In this document: positions 25,602 through 38,637 of the stretch, piece by piece
How the letters are laid out: each line of letters starts with the position of its first letter
Position numbering within the stretch: the stretch's first letter is position 1
IMG/VR virus record: IMGVR_UViG_3300031884_000002
Location: 248,001 to 312,000 of that record
Direction: 5' to 3' (one strand)
DNA length: 64,000 nt
Made by a program: the position numbers and the translations under genes
Notes under the pieces: model-generated
Seen by the model: the letters and a program-made list of their open reading frames with translations, nothing else
Database searches by the model: none
Told to the model about the DNA's origin: nothing

Positions 25602-26363
25602 TTATAATTGTTCCTTTAATTTAGACCTATGATATTTTACAGCAAATGTAGATATATTATATTTTTCTGCTATTTGAGGAATACTTAATATTTTGGATTT
25701 TATATCATTTATTAAATCATTTTTACAGATTTTCATTCTAAGTTTGGCGTCATTTGCTTTTTGTTTATTTTTTTCAGACATAGCCCCACGTTTTATTCCT
25801 TTGGTTTTGCTTGGATTACTATAATTCATTTTTCGATTTGCTAACATTGTTCTTCTTTCGTCGAATTTAATTTGGCCTTGCTCTGCTCCATATTTATTTA
25901 TAAACCAATCTAATGTAAATCTTCCTTTTGCTTTGTCTTTTTGTTTTTTTAATGCCTCCTCACTATGAGTTCGTCCAAACATAGGATTTCCTTCACCAGA
26001 ACATATGTCACTCATTTTTTCTATAAACGCATCTCTATTTGGATTATATGTTATGTTATCTCCTCCACTTGCTATATGACATATATTATATCCGATTCCT
26101 CTTATATGTGGCTTAAATATATCCAAATAATATTGTTCTCGCTCGAATAGTTTTTCCTGTATTGGTTCTACTTTTTCTAATATTAGAAAACTAAATTTAT
26201 CTTCTCCGTAAAAGTTCCAAGAATGTTGTAATTTTGGGTTTGTATGAATATTTAATTTCAATTCTCTTTTATGGTCGTACCATCGTCTATCTATATCTTT
26301 AGCACTTCCGATATAAAATTTACCAGTTATTTCGTTTGTTATTTTATATATTCCACTTTTCAT
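25602..26363 (-). CDS. GIY-YIG homing endonuclease with NUMOD3
   Basis: SGIYKITN..KFYIGSA..R..H; EREQYYLD; GYN; NPMFGRTHSEE. Confidence 0.9.
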   Translation of the reverse strand: MKSGIYKITNEITGKFYIGSAKDIDRRWYDHKRELKLNIHTNPKLQHSWNFYGEDKFSFLILEKVEPIQEKLFEREQYYLDIFKPHIRGIGYNICHIASGGDNITYNPNRDAFIEKMSDICSGEGNPMFGRTHSEEALKKQKDKAKGRFTLDWFINKYGAEQGQIKFDERRTMLANRKMNYSNPSKTKGIKRGAMSEKNKQKANDAKLRMKICKNDLINDIKSKILSIPQIAEKYNISTFAVKYHRSKLKEQL

Positions 26364-26478: not shown

Positions 26479-28206
26479 TTAGATCAAGTTAGCATCAGAT
26501 ACCAGTATGATCCCATAAAATTCGGGCCGGACTAGTTTCTTAGCGTAGCGGGTCATTACCCCCCTGCGAGGGGTAAAATTAATTGGATCATACACCAATG
26601 GAGTTTGAATCAAAGGAATATATGGAGAATAAACTGCACCAGTCTCCAAGAAGTTATTACCTCTAAAGCCCATCAAGATCAAGTTTTCTTGCATGTATGG
26701 GTTTTTATATACTTGGAATCTGCTTGCGAATGCTCCAACTTTGGAAACACCCATTGCAAACTTAGCAGAATCACCATCCGTATTAACTACAAATCCGGGA
26801 ATGGATTCCAAGATAGTAGCAACCGTTGGTCCCACGACCATGAAGTTAGCACCACCACGGAGAGTTAATTGATGAATACTATTGGAGATCTTTTGAATCT
26901 TTTGTCCAAGAGTTTGATACCAACTTGATTTGGTGTAGTAACCGAAACCTGCACCAGCGTTAGCAGCCGTTGAGTTATCAATAATCTGATAGCTATTCGC
27001 ACCAGTCTTGATAATATCACGATTGATCTTAGCACTCCAACGTTCCTTGTTGATGTTAGGAGCGCCGTTAATTAACATGTCAAGGATTTCGAGATCGATT
27101 TCCATTGATACATATTCCGACAATAATGCTGTTAATTCTGCTTCGGCATCGACAGAGTGATAAGCATTTAAATCTTGAGCCAATTCAGGAGTCCAAACGG
27201 CTTTCAATTTACGAGTTTTAGCAACAATAGGCTCACTATTCAATTGCAAGTTGATTTCGGGAATACCTATATCTTTATGCAATCCAGTAGAAGTACCACC
27301 AGCATCAGCAGAACCTTCAGTACCATGATCTTCGAAATCACCACGAGAGGTTGGCTCAGGTTGTAATGAGAAGTTAATGGTTGCTGGAGAAGTAATACCA
27401 GATCCACTAACAACGAAAATTAAATCATTAGGAGTATATCCACCATCATTAGGAGTAATGGTTGCACGAGTGAAACCGGGATAGTAGTTCAAAATACCAG
27501 AACCACTAACAGTAAACGAACGGATCGCCGATACATCAGGATATGATCCAGAATTAATATTGATACCGACACCAAATCCAGTAGTAGTAACTGTGAATAA
27601 TGAACCATTAGCTAAAGACGATGAAATCGCTTGATTAACAGGATCATTCACGTTACCAGTATCAAAATTAATATCAGATACACTTGCAGATGCAACTGTG
27701 ATAGAAGCAGTAGCAAAGTGATCATTGATGCTATATGCATAGCGACCAACACCATATAAACCACCAACAGGTGCATCAGTTGAACCGGATTTTACACCAG
27801 TACCACCGAATAATGATTGATAGTTAGTAGGAGAATCAGCAGTGAACGGACCATTTGACGTACCATACTTGAAGTCCAAATAGAATACTAATCCAGATGG
27901 CAAGTTCATGGGCTGTACGGAAACGAACTCCTTAGCAGCGATTTCAGCGAAAACACGGCGAACCAATGGCAAAGCTACACCAGCCCATTGTTCGGAGTTT
28001 CCTTGTGTGCCAGTAGCAGATGATTCTTCAATCAACTGTTTAGCTTGGTTTTCAAGCAATACTGACATGTTGCTCTTCTCGACTTGATTCTTCAAGCCTT
28101 CTAAGAGACCGGTTTTTTCCCATTTGGTTACTAAACCACGGGTTTCTTGTAACAATCTGGCTTGAGGATTCAAGGCAGAGATTAATAGTTGTTTTACATC
28201 ATTCAT
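26479..28206 (-). CDS. gp23: major capsid protein (T4 gp23-like)
   Basis: KWEKTGLLEGL, LLENQ, LPLVRRVF..SVQPMNLPSGLVFYL, AKTRKLKAVWTPELAQDL, YSPYIPL..FTPRRGVMTRY. Confidence 0.97.
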   Translation of the reverse strand: MNDVKQLLISALNPQARLLQETRGLVTKWEKTGLLEGLKNQVEKSNMSVLLENQAKQLIEESSATGTQGNSEQWAGVALPLVRRVFAEIAAKEFVSVQPMNLPSGLVFYLDFKYGTSNGPFTADSPTNYQSLFGGTGVKSGSTDAPVGGLYGVGRYAYSINDHFATASITVASASVSDINFDTGNVNDPVNQAISSSLANGSLFTVTTTGFGVGININSGSYPDVSAIRSFTVSGSGILNYYPGFTRATITPNDGGYTPNDLIFVVSGSGITSPATINFSLQPEPTSRGDFEDHGTEGSADAGGTSTGLHKDIGIPEINLQLNSEPIVAKTRKLKAVWTPELAQDLNAYHSVDAEAELTALLSEYVSMEIDLEILDMLINGAPNINKERWSAKINRDIIKTGANSYQIIDNSTAANAGAGFGYYTKSSWYQTLGQKIQKISNSIHQLTLRGGANFMVVGPTVATILESIPGFVVNTDGDSAKFAMGVSKVGAFASRFQVYKNPYMQENLILMGFRGNNFLETGAVYSPYIPLIQTPLVYDPINFTPRRGVMTRYAKKLVRPEFYGIILVSDANLI

Positions 28207-31984: not shown

Positions 31985-32929
31985 ATGAATAATGAAACTA
32001 TAAAATTATGTCCAATATGTAACTTACGACCATTAAAATTGGTAAAAAATTGTAAATCAAATTATTATGCTACGTGTTGTTATACTGATTGTGTTAAGCT
32101 AAAAAAACAACAAACTAATCTAAAAAAATATGGACATGTATGTGGAATTCATGGAACAAACAAACAAAAAGTAAAAGATTCTATATTTAAAAAATACGGA
32201 GTAATAAATGTTTCTCAGATTGACTGGGTTAAAAAGAAAAAAATTAAAACTTGTCAGAAAAATTTCGGATGTGATTTTCCAATGCAATCTTCTGAAATAA
32301 TGGAAAAAAGTAAGCAAACATTATTAAAATTATATGGAGTCATAAATATATTTCAAGTTCCTGATATCATAAATAAAATACATGATACTATGTTTAAAAT
32401 AGATCCAACGTTAGGAATAAGTAAATATGATTTAGTAATGCTTAAACATAGAGATAGAAACATGAAAAAATACGGAGTTCCATATTATGTTCAGACTGAT
32501 GAATTTAGAAAAAAATCAACTAAAACAATCATAGAACGATATGGAGTTGATAATTACAGTAAAACTAAGGAATTTCAAGAATTTTTAATATCATCTGGAA
32601 TTAAAAAGAATGATGAATTACGTAGTAAGTTTGATTTATATTATGGAAAAGTAATAAAATATACAAATAGAACATTTAGAAAATATAAACAGTTATTACA
32701 ACAAATATATGTTAGATCAAATAAATTTCATCTCGATCATATATATTCTATATCAGAAGGATTTAGAAATGATATAGATCCACGAATGATTGGATCATTG
32801 AGCAATTTACAATTAATTCCTGCTATTGTTAATATGAAAAAAAATTATAAATCATGGATAACTAAAGATAAGTTAATAGAATTGTATAATAAGTTATCAG
32901 ACGAAGATAAATATTTATTAGACTTATAA
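31985..32929 (+). CDS. homing endonuclease-like protein (KKYGV repeats + C-terminal HNH-like domain)
   Basis: repeated T.LKKYGV motifs; FHLDHIYSISEGF...NLQLIP..NMKK. Confidence 0.75.
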   Translation: MNNETIKLCPICNLRPLKLVKNCKSNYYATCCYTDCVKLKKQQTNLKKYGHVCGIHGTNKQKVKDSIFKKYGVINVSQIDWVKKKKIKTCQKNFGCDFPMQSSEIMEKSKQTLLKLYGVINIFQVPDIINKIHDTMFKIDPTLGISKYDLVMLKHRDRNMKKYGVPYYVQTDEFRKKSTKTIIERYGVDNYSKTKEFQEFLISSGIKKNDELRSKFDLYYGKVIKYTNRTFRKYKQLLQQIYVRSNKFHLDHIYSISEGFRNDIDPRMIGSLSNLQLIPAIVNMKKNYKSWITKDKLIELYNKLSDEDKYLLDL

Positions 32930-34291
32930 CCAACTATTCCGCTTAACATCATCGAACGTATATCGTTTAGTAATATTTCCATTTAGAAATACGATTTCTA
33001 ATTCAAGATTATCATCAAACCTTCCTCGTTGACTTGCTTTAGATATATCCAACGGAGTTTTATAAATATCATACCATGTTCCGTTTCTTTTTTGCGCCGA
33101 ACATTTAAACGCAAAACGTTCGGTGTCACGATTTAATTTTCTAACTAAATATGAACCACATCCAAACACACAAGTTTCAGCACTAAATCCGTTAGTTTTT
33201 AATGTTTCAAGTATGTTTTTTATATCGTGTTCTGTTAATGAATCTCCATATATACATCCAACGTGACTATCTAATACTTTATAATTTTTAGAATTTATAG
33301 TTCCTCCAAACCCGTTCCATAATTGTTGAGCAATCCATAATACTTGGGATTCTGGAGTATCTCCTTGGAACCTTGGACTATCGGGGCGAACAACAAATTT
33401 TCCATTTCTACTTAAAATATCAGATTTTAATTCATTACAATATACTTTAATCGCATTAGTAATATTATAACTATCGGATACAACGGATAGAATCCCGGTA
33501 GGATATTTTTTAATTAAATGTTTAGTAACTTCAAACTCTCCCTTTTCTCCAAGTGAAGTTGCAATACTATGTTCACTCGCTGGAACAGAATATGCTAATC
33601 CATCTATATTTGCATTATAATAATTAATAGCATATGGAAGAGCCATTAGACTATCGGTTCCTCTACTATTTACCAAATGTGCCATACACGCTACTCCGGC
33701 TTCTTCCATACATGACAATCCCCGTTGGGAAAAATCATGTAAGTAAAAATCTGCAAGCCACCGATTAGAAAAATCACAAGTTTTTTCAAAATAATCTTTT
33801 ATAATATTAACAATGTAATTACTTCTTGTACAGACTGTAATAGTGTCCCAAACCTGTTGTAAAACAGTTTCAAGTGCATTAGTAAGCCAATAGCAATTAG
33901 GATCTGTATTTTCAACTGTCATTAACACTGTTCCTACTGGATAATTTTTTCCTTCTTTTACCGCTTTAATTTTAACTGGAAGTTTTCCGTTATGTTTTTC
34001 AACAATATAATCCCATTTTGCACGACTCCAGACATCTCCATTAAATTTAAAATGTTCTTTTAAAATAGGCTCGGCTTGGTCTATTAATTCTTTTGTTATA
34101 ACCGTTCCTTCTAACCATTTAATTAAAATATATTGAAGTCCGAAAAATGTAGTATAATCATACATTGCTCCTTTTCTTGCTTCTAAATAAGAATATACAA
34201 CTTCAGTATTTGGCATATACATATCACTATGTAATTGTTTATAGGAATCTAAGGTCCAAATTATAGAATGTTCGTTAATTTTATTATTCAT
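32924..34291 (-). CDS. nadV: nicotinamide phosphoribosyltransferase (NAMPT/NadV family)
   Basis: DSYKQLH, FFGLQY, WLTNALET, LHDF..RG, PASEHS, SVVSDSY, VRPDS, RDTERFAFKCS. Confidence 0.92.
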   Translation of the reverse strand: MNNKINEHSIIWTLDSYKQLHSDMYMPNTEVVYSYLEARKGAMYDYTTFFGLQYILIKWLEGTVITKELIDQAEPILKEHFKFNGDVWSRAKWDYIVEKHNGKLPVKIKAVKEGKNYPVGTVLMTVENTDPNCYWLTNALETVLQQVWDTITVCTRSNYIVNIIKDYFEKTCDFSNRWLADFYLHDFSQRGLSCMEEAGVACMAHLVNSRGTDSLMALPYAINYYNANIDGLAYSVPASEHSIATSLGEKGEFEVTKHLIKKYPTGILSVVSDSYNITNAIKVYCNELKSDILSRNGKFVVRPDSPRFQGDTPESQVLWIAQQLWNGFGGTINSKNYKVLDSHVGCIYGDSLTEHDIKNILETLKTNGFSAETCVFGCGSYLVRKLNRDTERFAFKCSAQKRNGTWYDIYKTPLDISKASQRGRFDDNLELEIVFLNGNITKRYTFDDVKRNSWL

Positions 34292-34707: not shown

Positions 34708-35190
34708 TTAAATGAAAGTTGCTCCACCGTTCTCAATAATTTTTTCGATAAGTCTATGATGGGTATCTACCACAATATCTTTATAATTTTTTACAATTTC
34801 ACTCCATTTGAACCATTCTACCTTTTCAATATCATCTCCACCTTTGGCATGTCCATATAAAAATTGAAACAAAAATACAGCCGTTAAAATTTTATGCTCG
34901 CTATTTCTATATCGAGGGTCATCTTGTCTATTGCTAAATAAATATTTAGGAGAAGAACATTCTAGATTTTCACCTGCTTCTTCTTTTAATTCTCGAATTG
35001 CTGCCATTTCAAGAGTTTCGTCTTTTGGATCGACAAATCCACCAATAAGTCTAAACTTTGTTTCGGTTGGTTTTTTTCCTAGTAATACTAGTACATTTGT
35101 TTTGAGTGGATTTTCATCGTCGGCTGCTAAATTGATTACGACGCAATCCACACATTGGAACGAGGTTGGATATCTAATTGGTTCAATCAT
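34708..35190 (-). CDS. Nudix hydrolase (ADP-ribose pyrophosphatase, resembling the Nudix half of NadM-Nudix)
   Basis: Nudix box GGFVD..DETLEMAAIRELKEEAG; YPT..VD, DDPRYR, GDDI motifs. Confidence 0.88.
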   Translation of the reverse strand: MIEPIRYPTSFQCVDCVVINLAADDENPLKTNVLVLLGKKPTETKFRLIGGFVDPKDETLEMAAIRELKEEAGENLECSSPKYLFSNRQDDPRYRNSEHKILTAVFLFQFLYGHAKGGDDIEKVEWFKWSEIVKNYKDIVVDTHHRLIEKIIENGGATFI

Positions 35191-36919: not shown

Positions 36920-36947
36920 AGTGTATCAGATACTTACCAGAAGTCAA
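36920..36947 (-). promoter_or_regulatory. sigma70-type promoter
   Basis: TTGACT-16 nt-TACACT, 9 nt before ATG 36910. Confidence 0.6.
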
Positions 36948-37199
36948 GTATATTTTAACACTGTATTCATCATTTCTTCATCTATTTCTTTTGAAATCTC
37001 CTCATTCAATATACGCATTAGTTCTTCTCCCGCATCAATATTATAATATGCTGTTAAATTTTGTTCTAATTCAGCAGTCCAAGTGCATTTTAATACTCGT
37101 TTTTGACTTGCCGGTTTAACATTTTTAAGTAAACTTGGAGCAAGTGCCAATGCACCTGTTAATACTGGTAATAATTTAAAAAAAACTTCTTCTATTCAT
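36944..37199 (-). other. frameshifted mini-gene: Tat-like signal peptide + major-capsid fragment
   Basis: AGAGGA RBS, ATG 37199 MNRRSFF*; removing one T from the T8 run (37178-37185) gives MNRRSFFKLLPVLTGALALAPSLL.. fused to RVLKCTWTAELEQNLTAYYNIDA..EID, 22/42 aa identical to MCP. Confidence 0.7.
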
Positions 37200-37201
37200 A
37201 A

Positions 37202-37369
37202 TTATCCTCTATGACAAATTATTCTTGTTCGTTGTTCTGTTTTACATTTGGGACATTTGGTATTTATCAATTTATATCTATCAATATCGCATAAACATTT
37301 TGAACTGTTAATATTTTTTATAATAACAGGAGAGTTAATCCAGTTAAATAGTGTTTTAAAAATATTCAT
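37202..37369 (-). CDS. small Cys-containing hypothetical protein (55 aa)
   Basis: ATG 37369-TAA; CLC..CPKC..C; fills an operon gap. Confidence 0.45.
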   Translation of the reverse strand: MNIFKTLFNWINSPVIIKNINSSKCLCDIDRYKLINTKCPKCKTEQRTRIICHRG

Positions 37370-37372
37370 ATT

Positions 37373-37717
37373 TTAATGTTGTATCCATCCTCTAACAAAT
37401 ATATGGTTCCATCTATTTGTTATATCGAGATTAAAATAATTACCATCGGGATTTATAAATATTTCTCCGAAATAAACTCGATGAACGTGAGTTATACCTA
37501 AATATTTTATCTTTTTAATAATATTTGATTTCCAATCATATGGTATATCCATATTATCACGATTGGGATATATTCCTAAATCATATGTTACAGTAATATA
37601 AGGTTGATTATCCAATGTTATATTTGCCGGTGTATCAGTAAAAACAAATCCGGCTTGTAATATTTCATCAGTGGTAAGAACATTCCTACCATATTCACAA
37701 AATTCTTTATTATTCAT
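37373..37717 (-). CDS. hypothetical protein
   Basis: 114 aa, ATGA-coupled to upstream gene. Confidence 0.6.
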   Translation of the reverse strand: MNNKEFCEYGRNVLTTDEILQAGFVFTDTPANITLDNQPYITVTYDLGIYPNRDNMDIPYDWKSNIIKKIKYLGITHVHRVYFGEIFINPDGNYFNLDITNRWNHIFVRGWIQH

Positions 37718-38637
37718 ATTTTATATTTATTTACAAGTTCGTCTATTATATCAAATTCCTTTTTAATATCTATTTTTCGTTTTATATCTTCTTTTATTCT
37801 ATATAAAATAAAACCATTATCAAATGCTAATTTAGTTTTTATATCGTCGTTTTTTGATTTTCGTTCTTCGTGCCAATAATATCCATCATATTCTATTAAA
37901 ATTTTATCAAATAATATAATATCATACACATATGGATATGGAAAAATAACATATGAACTATTTACATTATTTTTTCCATATTTATTGGATAATAATTCAT
38001 GTATTTTTATTTCAATTGCTGATTTTGTTTTTGTTTCTGGACTTAAAAACTGTTTTAATTTTGTTATTCTTCTCATTTCAATCGGATTAACTACATTAGT
38101 TATAATCCAATATTTCTTTAATATTCGCTTGTCACATTTTATTTTAAATTTTTCTTTTAATATTTCAAAATTACATATATGATCTTTATAGTATTCAAAT
38201 GATTCTTTCAATATATCTAAAGTTAAATCTAATTTCCTCATTCCTTCCGAATAAATACGTTCTTTATTAAGTTCTCTATATTGTTTATTCTTTAATATTA
38301 TTGTATTTATAGTATCTTTGGTATGAGTTTTTCCATAAAATCCATTACGTTCTCCTAAATTGGATATTCTATTTTTTTCATTTGACTCTTGTTGTTTTAA
38401 ATCTGCTATTTTTTTACCATATTTAAATACCCATACATCATAATTTGTTCTTCCGTACATCGGATTATTTTTACCAGAATAATCATGAATGGCTGCTCCG
38501 ATTTTTTTCTTAGATTCTTCGGTATGGTGCTTTCCATAAAATGGATTATTCTTACCTTCATAATTTTTAATTTGATTTGACATACACATCCTCTCGCTAT
38601 ACCAATATACATATAAATCAAACATTAAAATAATCAA
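37714..38637 (-). CDS. homing endonuclease (NUMOD3 repeats + Vsr/DUF559-like PD-(D/E)XK domain)
   Basis: NPFYGKHHTEE repeats; YD..IEYDGYYWH..D..K..A..G..LYRI; real start probably near 38583. Confidence 0.8.
   Translation of the reverse strand: MIILMFDLYVYWYSERMCMSNQIKNYEGKNNPFYGKHHTEESKKKIGAAIHDYSGKNNPMYGRTNYDVWVFKYGKKIADLKQQESNEKNRISNLGERNGFYGKTHTKDTINTIILKNKQYRELNKERIYSEGMRKLDLTLDILKESFEYYKDHICNFEILKEKFKIKCDKRILKKYWIITNVVNPIEMRRITKLKQFLSPETKTKSAIEIKIHELLSNKYGKNNVNSSYVIFPYPYVYDIILFDKILIEYDGYYWHEERKSKNDDIKTKLAFDNGFILYRIKEDIKRKIDIKKEFDIIDELVNKYKI

What the first reader, a model, noticed from the sequence alone, without database searches (positions are those of the whole stretch)
36944..37199. 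Mini-capsid mimic: Tat-type signal peptide fused to a 42-aa copy of the major-capsid core segment
Seen: ORF 36944..37150 contains RVLKCTWTAELEQNLTAYYNIDAGEELMRILNEEISKEIDEE (36974-37099). It aligns without gaps to MCP RKLKAVWTPELAQDLNAYHSVDAEAELTALLSEYVSMEIDLE (27088-27213), 22/42 identical. Upstream, an AGAGGA RBS and ATG 37199 encode MNRRSFF, which joins KLLPVLTGALALAPSLL in the adjacent frame. Known: x-R-R-x-F-F-K plus a hydrophobic stretch matches the twin-arginine export consensus; the copied segment is the gp23/HK97-fold P-domain strand plus spine helix; capsid proteins trigger defences such as CapRel(SJ46) and Lit. The gene sits in the sigma70-driven accessory island, not among late genes. 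Inference: an early, membrane-targeted or exported capsid-epitope decoy, either for capsid-sensing immunity or as a dominant-negative poison of competing phages' head assembly.
Basis: partly seen in the sequence, partly recalled or inferred. Interest (0 to 1): 0.88.

Follow-up and report, generated by a model that had tools for sequence, protein, structure and literature searches.

The report
Broken Tat-signal capsid-fragment gene
This is a real small phage gene that joins a twin-arginine export signal to a piece of the phage's own major capsid protein; dozens of related lake phages carry intact versions of this uncatalogued family, but the copy in this genome is split by a one-base frameshift and is probably inactive.

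Summary
ORF 36944..37150(-) matches the window's own major capsid protein (MCP, 26479..28206-) at BLASTP E 8e-14 and scores above Pfam's Gp23 threshold. Upstream, an ATG with a ribosome-binding site encodes MNRRSFF and then a stop. The rest of the gene lies in the +1 frame, across a T8 run.

It is not an isolated oddity. A profile search of 1.84 billion proteins found at least 60 clusters of 59-133-aa proteins. Of 67 retrieved, 61 start with [RK]R-x-F-[LF] followed by an uncharged stretch. After that come pieces of the MCP P-domain: the strand, short acidic helix and spine helix (T4 gp23 256-311), the C-terminal strands, or both.

A sister phage has an intact 85-aa ortholog at the same genomic position. 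NCBI's Tat-signal model passes its cutoff in 4 of 10 members tested.

No relative shares the frameshift. The window's phage shows T8 in every assembly read (two JGI assemblies plus the window). So this copy is most likely recently inactivated, or at best dependent on slippage.

The function is unknown. The family is absent from PHROGs, from GenBank phages, and from the literature searches I ran.

The parts
37205..37210 (-). AGAGGA ribosome-binding site, lying inside the end of the upstream 55-aa ORF (whose stop is at 37202..37204)
   Evidence: sequence; ORF 37202..37369
37179..37199 (-). Piece 1: start codon plus twin-arginine n-region, M-N-R-R-S-F-F, followed by TAA at 37176..37178
   Evidence: The same motif is in frame in the sister ortholog P0017 and in 61/67 small homologs.
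37178..37185 (-). T8 homopolymer holding the +1 frameshift that separates piece 1 from piece 2
   Evidence: T8A3 in the window and in loci from two JGI assemblies; the sister phage reads T6A4 and is in frame.
37127..37177 (-). Piece 2 start: K followed by a 16-residue uncharged h-region (L-L-P-V-L-T-G-A-L-A-L-A-P-S-L-L). Gene callers place a TTG start inside it, at 37150.
   Evidence: The N-terminal-only family HMM hits this ORF at E 8e-4. AF2 predicts a helix over residues 4-18 of the 77-aa piece.
37076..37099 (-). Positively charged MCP-like beta-strand (R-V-L-K-C-T-W-T), equivalent to T4 gp23 R264-S271
   Evidence: extended in the AF2 model
37043..37075 (-). Short acidic helix (A-E-L-E-Q-N-L...), equivalent to the T4 gp23 helix that contains Ala275
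   Evidence: helix 35-45, high pLDDT; E at the Ala275-equivalent position in 20/29 small homologs, against A in 39/70 MCP-sized proteins. PMC9958956 describes the helix's role.
36947..37033 (-). Spine-helix equivalent and C-terminus; the stop codon is at 36944..36946
   Evidence: helix 49-76, pLDDT above 90; profile match to gp23 256-311, E 2e-11
27088..27213 (-). The homologous segment within the phage's own MCP gene (26479..28206-, residues 332-373). It is the most conserved stretch of the MCP across 61 distinct relatives.

Best explanation
The locus is a frameshift-disrupted copy of a conserved but uncatalogued phage accessory gene family.

What intact members look like (shown): they are 60-130 aa. 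They begin with a twin-arginine (Tat-type) signal peptide, typically M-N-R-R-x-F-[LF]-K followed by an Ala/Val/Gly-rich uncharged stretch. They then carry one or both halves of the MCP P-domain. One half is the basic beta-strand, the short acidic helix and the spine helix. The other half is the C-terminal P-domain strands. The A-domain and the insertion domain are missing.

What is wrong with this copy (shown): a T8 run inside the codons for the signal's F-F-K puts the start codon and RR motif (7 codons) out of frame with the remaining 77 codons.

Consequence for this copy (inferred): a full-length product could arise only through rare +1 slippage. By default this is a recently inactivated gene whose downstream frame has not yet decayed.

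How intact relatives probably work (inferred):
- The signal takes the protein to TatBC. The MCP-derived module then ends up on the periplasmic side of the inner membrane, either released or held by an uncleaved signal anchor.
- The module does not fold on its own. It most likely acts by docking onto a partner through the same strand and helix surfaces that join neighbouring capsomers in the capsid.
- Given its position among dispensable accessory genes, the role is most likely at the cell envelope and non-essential, such as superinfection or lysis-timing control. No partner has been identified.
For: MCP derivation.

Family:
- The profile search gave 229 hits. About half of the best 150 listed are 59-133-aa proteins that match the whole profile; the rest are 450-690-aa MCPs that match only the C-terminal two-thirds of the profile.
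- In the retrieved sequences, 61/67 have [RK]R-x-F-[LF] at residues 2-4, and 53/67 have an uncharged stretch of at least 13 residues.
- Two apparent exceptions are start miscalls that have the motif in frame upstream.

Tat signal: TIGR01409 scores above its curated cutoff in 4 of 10 members and just below it in 4 more.

Orthology and synteny:
- P0017 (85 aa, intact, indexed in 47 blocks of the contig collection) lies between an IMPDH-like gene and DUF5662, as in the window.
- L088, L090, L092 and L098 carry members within 1.2 kb of DUF5662.

Frameshift:
- The window reads T8A3 where the sister phage reads T6A4 in frame.
- T8 is present in the window and in loci from two JGI assemblies.
- No intact allele of this phage's own gene appeared in the search of 5.8 billion clusters.

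Selection: dN/dS is about 0.40 against the sister ortholog, compared with 0.07 for the DUF5662 neighbour.

No autonomous fold: AF2 gives confident helices only, and no sheet even for the longest mixed member.

Interface elements: PMC9958956 describes the basic strand and the short acidic helix as the inter-capsomer contact near the quasi-threefold axes.
Against: - All assemblies of this phage carry T8, and the downstream frame is still fully open. Slippage-dependent expression therefore cannot be excluded.
- Tat export is predicted only. Pfam's TAT_signal model stays below its threshold in every member (best 21.6 against 22.7 bits).
- Signal-peptidase sites are inconsistent between members.
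- The host is unknown.
- A periplasmic location gives no obvious partner for a capsid-derived surface.
- The profile I searched with included the signal region, so it favours hits that have one.
Confidence: 0.6

Rival explanations
1. The gene is functional here. The T8 run followed by a stop codon acts as a recoding site, through ribosomal +1 slippage of tRNA-Phe from UUU onto the overlapping UUU with UAA in the A site, or through RNA-polymerase slippage on the homopolymer. This would yield a low or variable amount of the full 84-aa Tat-targeted protein.
For: - The sequence U-UUU-UUU-UAA-A allows perfect re-pairing in the +1 frame.
- The ribosome-binding site, the start codon, the RR motif and all 77 downstream codons are intact.
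- T8 is fixed in all assemblies seen, and no intact allele is on record.
- From general knowledge: the prfB-type site CUU-UGA, and polymerase slippage on A/T runs of about 8-9 bases or longer.
Against: - No homolog shares a shift at this site. In 61/67 the motif is in frame, and two apparent exceptions are start miscalls.
- The sister ortholog is in frame with a shorter run.
- No good Shine-Dalgarno-like stimulator lies upstream; AGAAGAAG pairs poorly.
- The contigs are nearly clonal, so fixation does not imply selection.
Confidence: 0.15
2. One reading: the protein acts in the cytoplasm as a capsid mimic. It would either soak up or blind a capsid-sensing defence, or cap capsomer edges and poison the head assembly of co-infecting relatives.
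For: - The type-B module contains both elements of the inter-capsomer contact, the basic strand and the short acidic helix (PMC9958956).
- It carries E at the position of T4 Ala275 in 20/29 small proteins, against A in most MCPs. The A275T change at that position alters T4 head geometry (PMC9958956).
- The copied segments are the most conserved parts of the MCP, and so are plausible sensor targets.
- The neighbouring genes include a NAMPT plus NUDIX pair. From my own knowledge, that pair is of a kind linked to counter-defence.
Against: - The best-conserved feature of the family is an export signal. That removes the passenger from the cytoplasm, where capsid sensors and head assembly operate.
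- The MCP segment is nearly invariant across the clade, so a poison could not spare the phage's own capsid.
- No defence gene or sensor was identified.
- The copy in this genome is broken.
Confidence: 0.15
3. The 68-aa ORF is translated from the TTG at 37150 as gene callers predict. That would give a cytoplasmic, signal-less capsid fragment with a new function.
For: Gene callers in the JGI and Logan data call exactly this ORF.
Against: - The TTG lies in the middle of the h-region and has only a poorly spaced partial Shine-Dalgarno sequence.
- A strong ribosome-binding site and ATG sit 49 bases upstream, in the other frame.
- All relatives start at the RR motif.
Confidence: 0.06
4. It is a neutrally decaying duplicate of the MCP gene, for example debris left by homing-endonuclease activity, with no protein-level function in any phage.
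For: - Three homing-endonuclease genes lie nearby: 25602..26363, 31985..32929 and 37714..38637.
- The window copy is frameshifted.
Against: - There are dozens of intact, diverged homologs with a conserved N-terminal signal that the MCP itself lacks.
- The position is syntenic in several phages.
- dN/dS is about 0.4.
- The fragment is only 63% identical to the MCP at the DNA level, so it is not a recent copy.
Confidence: 0.03

Closest known systems
T4 gp23 / gp24 P-domain (Pfam PF07068; PDB 5VF3, 7VS5, 1YUE)
   Same: The family profile matches gp23 residues 256-311 (E 2e-11) and gp24 164-220 (E 2e-6). This covers the basic strand, the short acidic helix that contains Ala275, and the spine helix. 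Other family members carry the C-terminal P-domain strands.
   Different: Only about 48 of the 376 model positions are present. There is no A-domain, insertion domain or N-arm. The N-terminal export signal is absent from capsid proteins. The small proteins evolve far faster than the nearly invariant MCP segment.
Twin-arginine signal peptides (TIGR01409 / PF10518), including uncleaved Rieske-type signal anchors
   Same: There is an N-R-R-x-F-[LF]-K motif at the extreme N-terminus, followed by a weakly hydrophobic Ala/Gly-rich stretch. TIGR01409 scores above its cutoff in 4 of 10 members.
   Different: The passenger is a 40-100-aa fragment with no predicted autonomous fold and no cofactor. Cleavage sites are inconsistent. 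In the window, the signal is out of frame with its passenger.
Small exported accessory proteins of T4 (antiholin RI, Sp, Imm), from my own knowledge and the reference list of PMC13673990
   Same: They are short, dispensable phage proteins with an N-terminal signal that act at the envelope, in lysis timing or superinfection exclusion.
   Different: There is no sequence relationship. Those proteins use Sec-type signals or membrane helices and are not derived from a capsid protein. No envelope role was tested here.
Capsid-assembly redirectors of satellites (P4 Sid, SaPI CpmB, PICI Ccm), from my own knowledge
   Same: These are proteins that imitate or bind MCP surfaces. Ccm is itself an HK97-fold homolog.
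   Different: They are cytoplasmic, encoded by satellites, and either complete folds or scaffold mimics. None has an export signal.
Hepatitis B precore protein / e-antigen, from my own knowledge; an analogy only
   Same: A signal peptide placed in front of capsid-protein sequence diverts it from assembly into the secretory pathway.
   Different: It is an animal virus using eukaryotic ER export of a nearly whole core protein. There is no evolutionary or mechanistic link.
prfB-type +1 programmed frameshift sites
   Same: A slippery codon can re-pair in the +1 frame, and it is followed directly by a stop codon.
   Different: There is no Shine-Dalgarno-like stimulator, and the shift is not conserved in any homolog.

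Membership tests
Tat (twin-arginine) signal peptide | Consensus (S/T)-R-R-x-F-L-K close to the N-terminus | tested here: met
   The window reads M-N-R-R-S-F-F, with K as the first codon of the adjoining frame. In relatives, 61/67 have [RK]R-x-F-[LF] at residues 2-4.
Tat (twin-arginine) signal peptide | Uncharged, moderately hydrophobic h-region of about 13 or more residues after the motif | tested here: met
   The window has 16 uncharged residues after K. In relatives, 53/67 have at least 13.
Tat (twin-arginine) signal peptide | Score above the curated HMM cutoffs | tested here: inconclusive
   The window cannot be scored across the frameshift. TIGR01409 passes in 4/10 relatives (17.2-18.9 against 16.7 bits) and falls just short in 4 more. 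Pfam PF10518 never reaches 22.7 bits; the best is 21.6.
Tat (twin-arginine) signal peptide | Signal and passenger in one reading frame | tested here: not met
   In the window a +1 frameshift in the T8 run separates them. The feature is met in relatives.
Tat (twin-arginine) signal peptide | Export that depends on TatABC and on the RR pair | not testable with these tools
   This needs reporter fusions in tat+ and tat-deletion strains. The host of this phage is unknown.
Gp23-type major capsid protein (PF07068, HK97 fold) | Significant match to the family model | tested here: met
   42.6 bits against a gathering threshold of 24.4; PHROG 138 at E 4e-10.
Gp23-type major capsid protein (PF07068, HK97 fold) | Complete fold able to form capsomers (N-arm, E-loop/insertion domain, P-domain, A-domain) | tested here: not met
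   Only model positions 148-195 of 376 are present. The AF2 model shows a strand-less helical fragment.
T4 prohead core proteins gp67/gp68 | Sequence similarity, and a position between the portal and protease genes | tested here: not met
   There is no BLASTP alignment to T4 gp67 at E up to 100. The gene lies about 9 kb from the MCP, among accessory genes.
Programmed +1 frameshift (prfB type) | Slippery codon that re-pairs in +1, followed by a stop codon | tested here: met
   UUU-UUU-UAA-A.
Programmed +1 frameshift (prfB type) | Conservation of the shift among homologs, and an upstream Shine-Dalgarno-like stimulator | tested here: not met
   All informative homologs are in frame. The upstream AGAAGAAG is not Shine-Dalgarno-like.

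The most novel reading that the evidence does not exclude
Intact members form a previously undescribed class of phage accessory protein: a capsid P-domain interface module that has been re-used and sent to the Tat translocon. It could work in one of three ways, none of which has a precedent in phages:
- as a periplasmic or membrane-anchored binder of capsid-interior peptides ejected by superinfecting sibling phages, giving a superinfection or lysis-inhibition signal;
- as a Tat-anchored tether that holds capsomers, or a capsid-binding host factor, at the membrane;
- as a carrier that drags a bound cytoplasmic partner out of the cell by Tat hitch-hiking.
Probability: 0.3. Interest if true: 0.85.

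Novelty: new variant of a known kind. Interest (0 to 1): 0.62.

Why it matters
Capsid proteins are known to be re-used as whole folds, for example in encapsulins and in the capsids of satellites. A conserved family that keeps only the inter-capsomer contact elements and places them behind an export signal has not, as far as my searches show, been described. It is absent from PHROGs v4, from 50,697 GenBank phage records and from the literature I queried.

If the proteins are truly exported, they point to an interaction on the periplasmic side that involves capsid-like surfaces. If they act before export, they would be a new way of interfering with, or localising, head assembly.

For annotation there are two practical lessons:
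- Short ORFs that hit Gp23 models in jumbo-phage metagenomes are not all MCP fragments or assembly errors.
- Gene callers often miss the true RR start of these genes.

For this particular genome the result is more modest: the copy is broken.

Tried and rejected
- **T4 gp67/gp68 prohead-core link** (recalled from memory): there is no alignment between the small protein and gp67, and gp67 against gp23 gives only E 0.6. Rejected.
- **Family in cultured phages**: tblastn with the window ORF and with two family members hit only full-length MCP genes. Megablast of the locus found nothing.
- **Family in bacterial genomes**: the genome-contig scan returned only MCP-type matches on phage-like contigs in MAGs, and none covered the N-terminus. 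It gave no clue to the host.
- **Word-index search**: the searches with the window ORF and with P0017 found only close copies. The family became visible only through neighbour-gene loci and the exhaustive HMM search.
- **Degenerate DNA pattern for G-Y-V-Y-A-P-Y-I-P**: this recovered mainly MCP genes and one new family member.
- **Promoter and terminator scan**: counts are at shuffle level. T4-type late-promoter boxes are enriched in the window as a whole (46 against 25 expected), but none lies upstream of this gene on its strand.
- **Foldseek against the PDB**: T4 gp23 was the top hit but only at E 0.36, because the model is a short helical fragment.
- **AF2 of the longest mixed member**: the aim was to see a mini P-domain sheet. 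No strands were predicted and mean pLDDT was 70.
- **Second copy in the window**: none found.
- **Literature**: searches on Tat plus capsid and on capsid decoys returned nothing relevant. Mooney et al. 1987, on the ptg mutations, is not held.

Full report
**1. The observation**

- On the minus strand, the stop codon of a 55-aa ORF (37202..37204) is followed two bases later by an ATG at 37199. AGAGGA lies just upstream of that ATG.
- The ATG frame reads M-N-R-R-S-F-F and stops at 37176..37178.
- A run of eight T (37185..37178) spans the junction. The +1 frame then continues open from K at 37177 to the stop at 36944..36946.
- Gene finders therefore call a 68-aa TTG-initiated ORF, 36944..37150.
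- That ORF aligns with the window's own 575-aa major capsid protein (26479..28206-) at BLASTP E 8e-14, 24/57 identities.
- It also exceeds Pfam's Gp23 gathering score (42.6 against 24.4 bits) and hits PHROG 138, major head protein.

**2. Which genome this is**

- The locus is identical in JGI contigs of about 354 kb. The exact 68-aa product is indexed on 16 JGI and 5 Logan contigs.
- The nearest cultured relatives by MCP are distant T4-like and jumbo phages of Flavobacterium, Microcystis, Pseudomonas and others.
- This is an uncultured T4-like jumbo phage from lake metagenomes. Its host is unknown.

**3. It is a family, not an accident**

- I fetched loci around homologs of the neighbouring DUF5662 gene and read the small ORFs nearby.
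- In four related phages this revealed in-frame proteins of 69-79 aa. They begin M-N-R-R-G-F-L, M-N-K-R-R-F-L, M-K-R-R-G-F-L or M-Y-R-R-E-F-L. A hydrophobic stretch follows, and then MCP-like sequence.
- A profile built from these was scored against 1.84 billion representative proteins and gave 229 hits.
  - About half of the best 150 listed are 59-133-aa proteins that match the whole profile.
  - The rest are 450-690-aa capsid proteins that match only the MCP-like part.
- Of the 67 small sequences retrieved, 61 have [RK]R-x-F-[LF] at residues 2-4, and 53 have an uncharged run of at least 13 residues after it.
- Two apparent exceptions are start-codon miscalls. The motif is present in frame just upstream.
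- NCBI's Tat-signal model TIGR01409 scores above its curated cutoff in 4 of 10 members tested and just below it in 4 more. Pfam's shorter model stays just under its threshold.

**4. What follows the signal**

- Type B members include the window copy. They carry the basic strand (R-K-L-K-x-x-W-T), a short acidic helix (E-x-E-Q-D-L) and a long helix.
- Type A members carry the MCP's C-terminal strands (F-L-E-x-G-Y-V-Y-A-P-Y-I-P-L). Some continue to the MCP's C-terminus.
- A few members have both halves, and one has them in reversed order.
- The type-B profile matches T4 gp23 residues 256-311 (E 2e-11) and gp24 residues 164-220.
- In T4 this region is the P-domain's positively charged strand, the short negatively charged helix that contains Ala275, and the spine helix.
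  - The strand and the short helix form the electrostatic contact between neighbouring capsomers near the quasi-threefold axes.
  - The A275T change produces isometric heads (PMC9958956).
  - The substitutions that bypass the gp31 chaperonin lie in the spine helix and in the P-domain sheet (PMC9546572).
- In the 61 distinct MCPs of this clade, residues 321-370 are the most conserved stretch (0.96-1.0 per column). Residues 511-550 are nearly as conserved.
  - There is a caveat. Homology is easiest to detect where the MCP is most conserved.
- At the position equivalent to Ala275, the small proteins have Glu in 20 of 29 cases, whereas MCP-sized proteins mostly have Ala.
- AF2 models give confident helices but no sheet, even for a 133-aa member that has both halves. 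The module probably does not fold on its own.

**5. The window copy is broken**

- The closest relative, P0017, is 85 aa, intact, and indexed in 47 blocks of the contig collection.
- It occupies the same position as the window gene, between an IMPDH-like gene and DUF5662, with RlaP, NUDIX and NAMPT genes further on.
- At the motif its DNA reads T6A4 in frame, where the window reads T8A3.
- T8 is present in the window and in loci from two independent JGI assemblies.
- No in-frame allele of this phage's own gene exists among 5.8 billion protein clusters.
- No other family member has a shift at this site.
- The ribosome-binding site, the start codon, the RR motif and all downstream codons are still intact, so the lesion is recent.
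- Against P0017, dN/dS is about 0.40 (dS 0.82), compared with 0.07 for the adjacent DUF5662 gene. The gene is weakly constrained or partly under diversifying pressure, but it is not neutral.
- The sequence U-UUU-UUU-UAA-A could in principle allow +1 ribosomal slippage or polymerase slippage. Because the shift is not conserved and there is no stimulator, I rate that at about 0.15.

**6. Mechanism**

Shown:
- derivation from the MCP;
- the conserved RR signal;
- synteny with intact orthologs;
- the frameshift in this copy.

Inferred:
- Intact proteins are delivered to the Tat translocase and end up on the periplasmic side of the inner membrane, either released or anchored.
- There the strand and helix module binds a partner.

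Unknown: the partner and the benefit to the phage.

They would also hit the phage's own capsid, because the MCP segment is invariant across the clade.
- The module does contain exactly the inter-capsomer contact elements. Action before export, or tethering at TatBC, therefore cannot be dismissed.
- I keep these readings as rivals and as the novel case.

**7. Novelty**

- No PHROG covers the family. Members hit only the major-head-protein PHROG.
- No GenBank phage record holds a member.
- No species-representative bacterial genome holds one.
- Full-text searches found nothing on the subject.
- The family looks undescribed. The window's copy is a degenerate example of it.

Noticed in passing
window 37714..38637 (-), and 37373..37717, 37202..37369: A NUMOD3/HNH-type homing endonuclease gene and two small ORFs lie between the IMPDH-like gene and the small gene. 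The sister phage (L106) has only one 86-aa ORF there. The IMPDH-like proteins of the two phages are only 25% identical, so this block has been rearranged or replaced.
   Followed up: partly
window 25602..26363 (-) and 31985..32929 (+): A GIY-YIG homing endonuclease gene sits directly downstream of the MCP gene, as segD does after gene 23 in T4. Another homing endonuclease gene lies 4 kb further on. The head region is rich in mobile endonucleases.
   Followed up: partly
window 32924..34291 (-) and 34708..35190 (-): A nicotinamide phosphoribosyltransferase gene (PHROG 448, E 4e-132) and a NUDIX hydrolase gene lie in the same accessory block. From my own knowledge, this looks like an NAD-salvage pair of the kind linked to counter-defence.
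   Followed up: no
window 27060..27250 (MCP residues about 321-370): This MCP stretch is essentially invariant in 61 distinct MCPs that are only 59-83% identical overall. The insertion-domain region (residues about 160-310) is far more variable, at 0.25-0.6 per column.
   Followed up: yes
L116:1055-1312 compared with L106:5001-5258: Two near-identical sister alleles (P0152 and P0017) differ by five substitutions, three of them amino-acid changes within five residues of the short acidic helix. The upstream 86-aa gene is identical between them. This may be a mutational hot spot or a short conversion tract.
   Followed up: partly
protein P0023 (168 aa): This member has the two MCP-derived halves in reversed order: C-terminal strands first, then a long acidic linker, then the strand plus helix. 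That suggests a fusion of two adjacent family genes. Its called start lacks the RR motif.
   Followed up: no
L199:3172-3462 (+), contig IMGVR_UViG_3300020154_000003 (366 kb): Another jumbo phage carries a roughly 90-aa ORF made of an MCP C-terminal fragment with no RR signal. It may be a separate kind of capsid-fragment gene or part of a split MCP.
   Followed up: no
window 36920..36947 (-): A promoter-like TTGACT-16-TACACT element with a TG extension overlaps the stop codon of the small gene, just upstream of DUF5662. The TTGAC part is also present at the same place in the sister phage.
   Followed up: no
L111:2957-3225 and L114:2969-3180: Gene callers started these family members at an internal ATG and missed the in-frame RR start. 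Database entries for this family are therefore often N-terminally truncated.
   Followed up: yes
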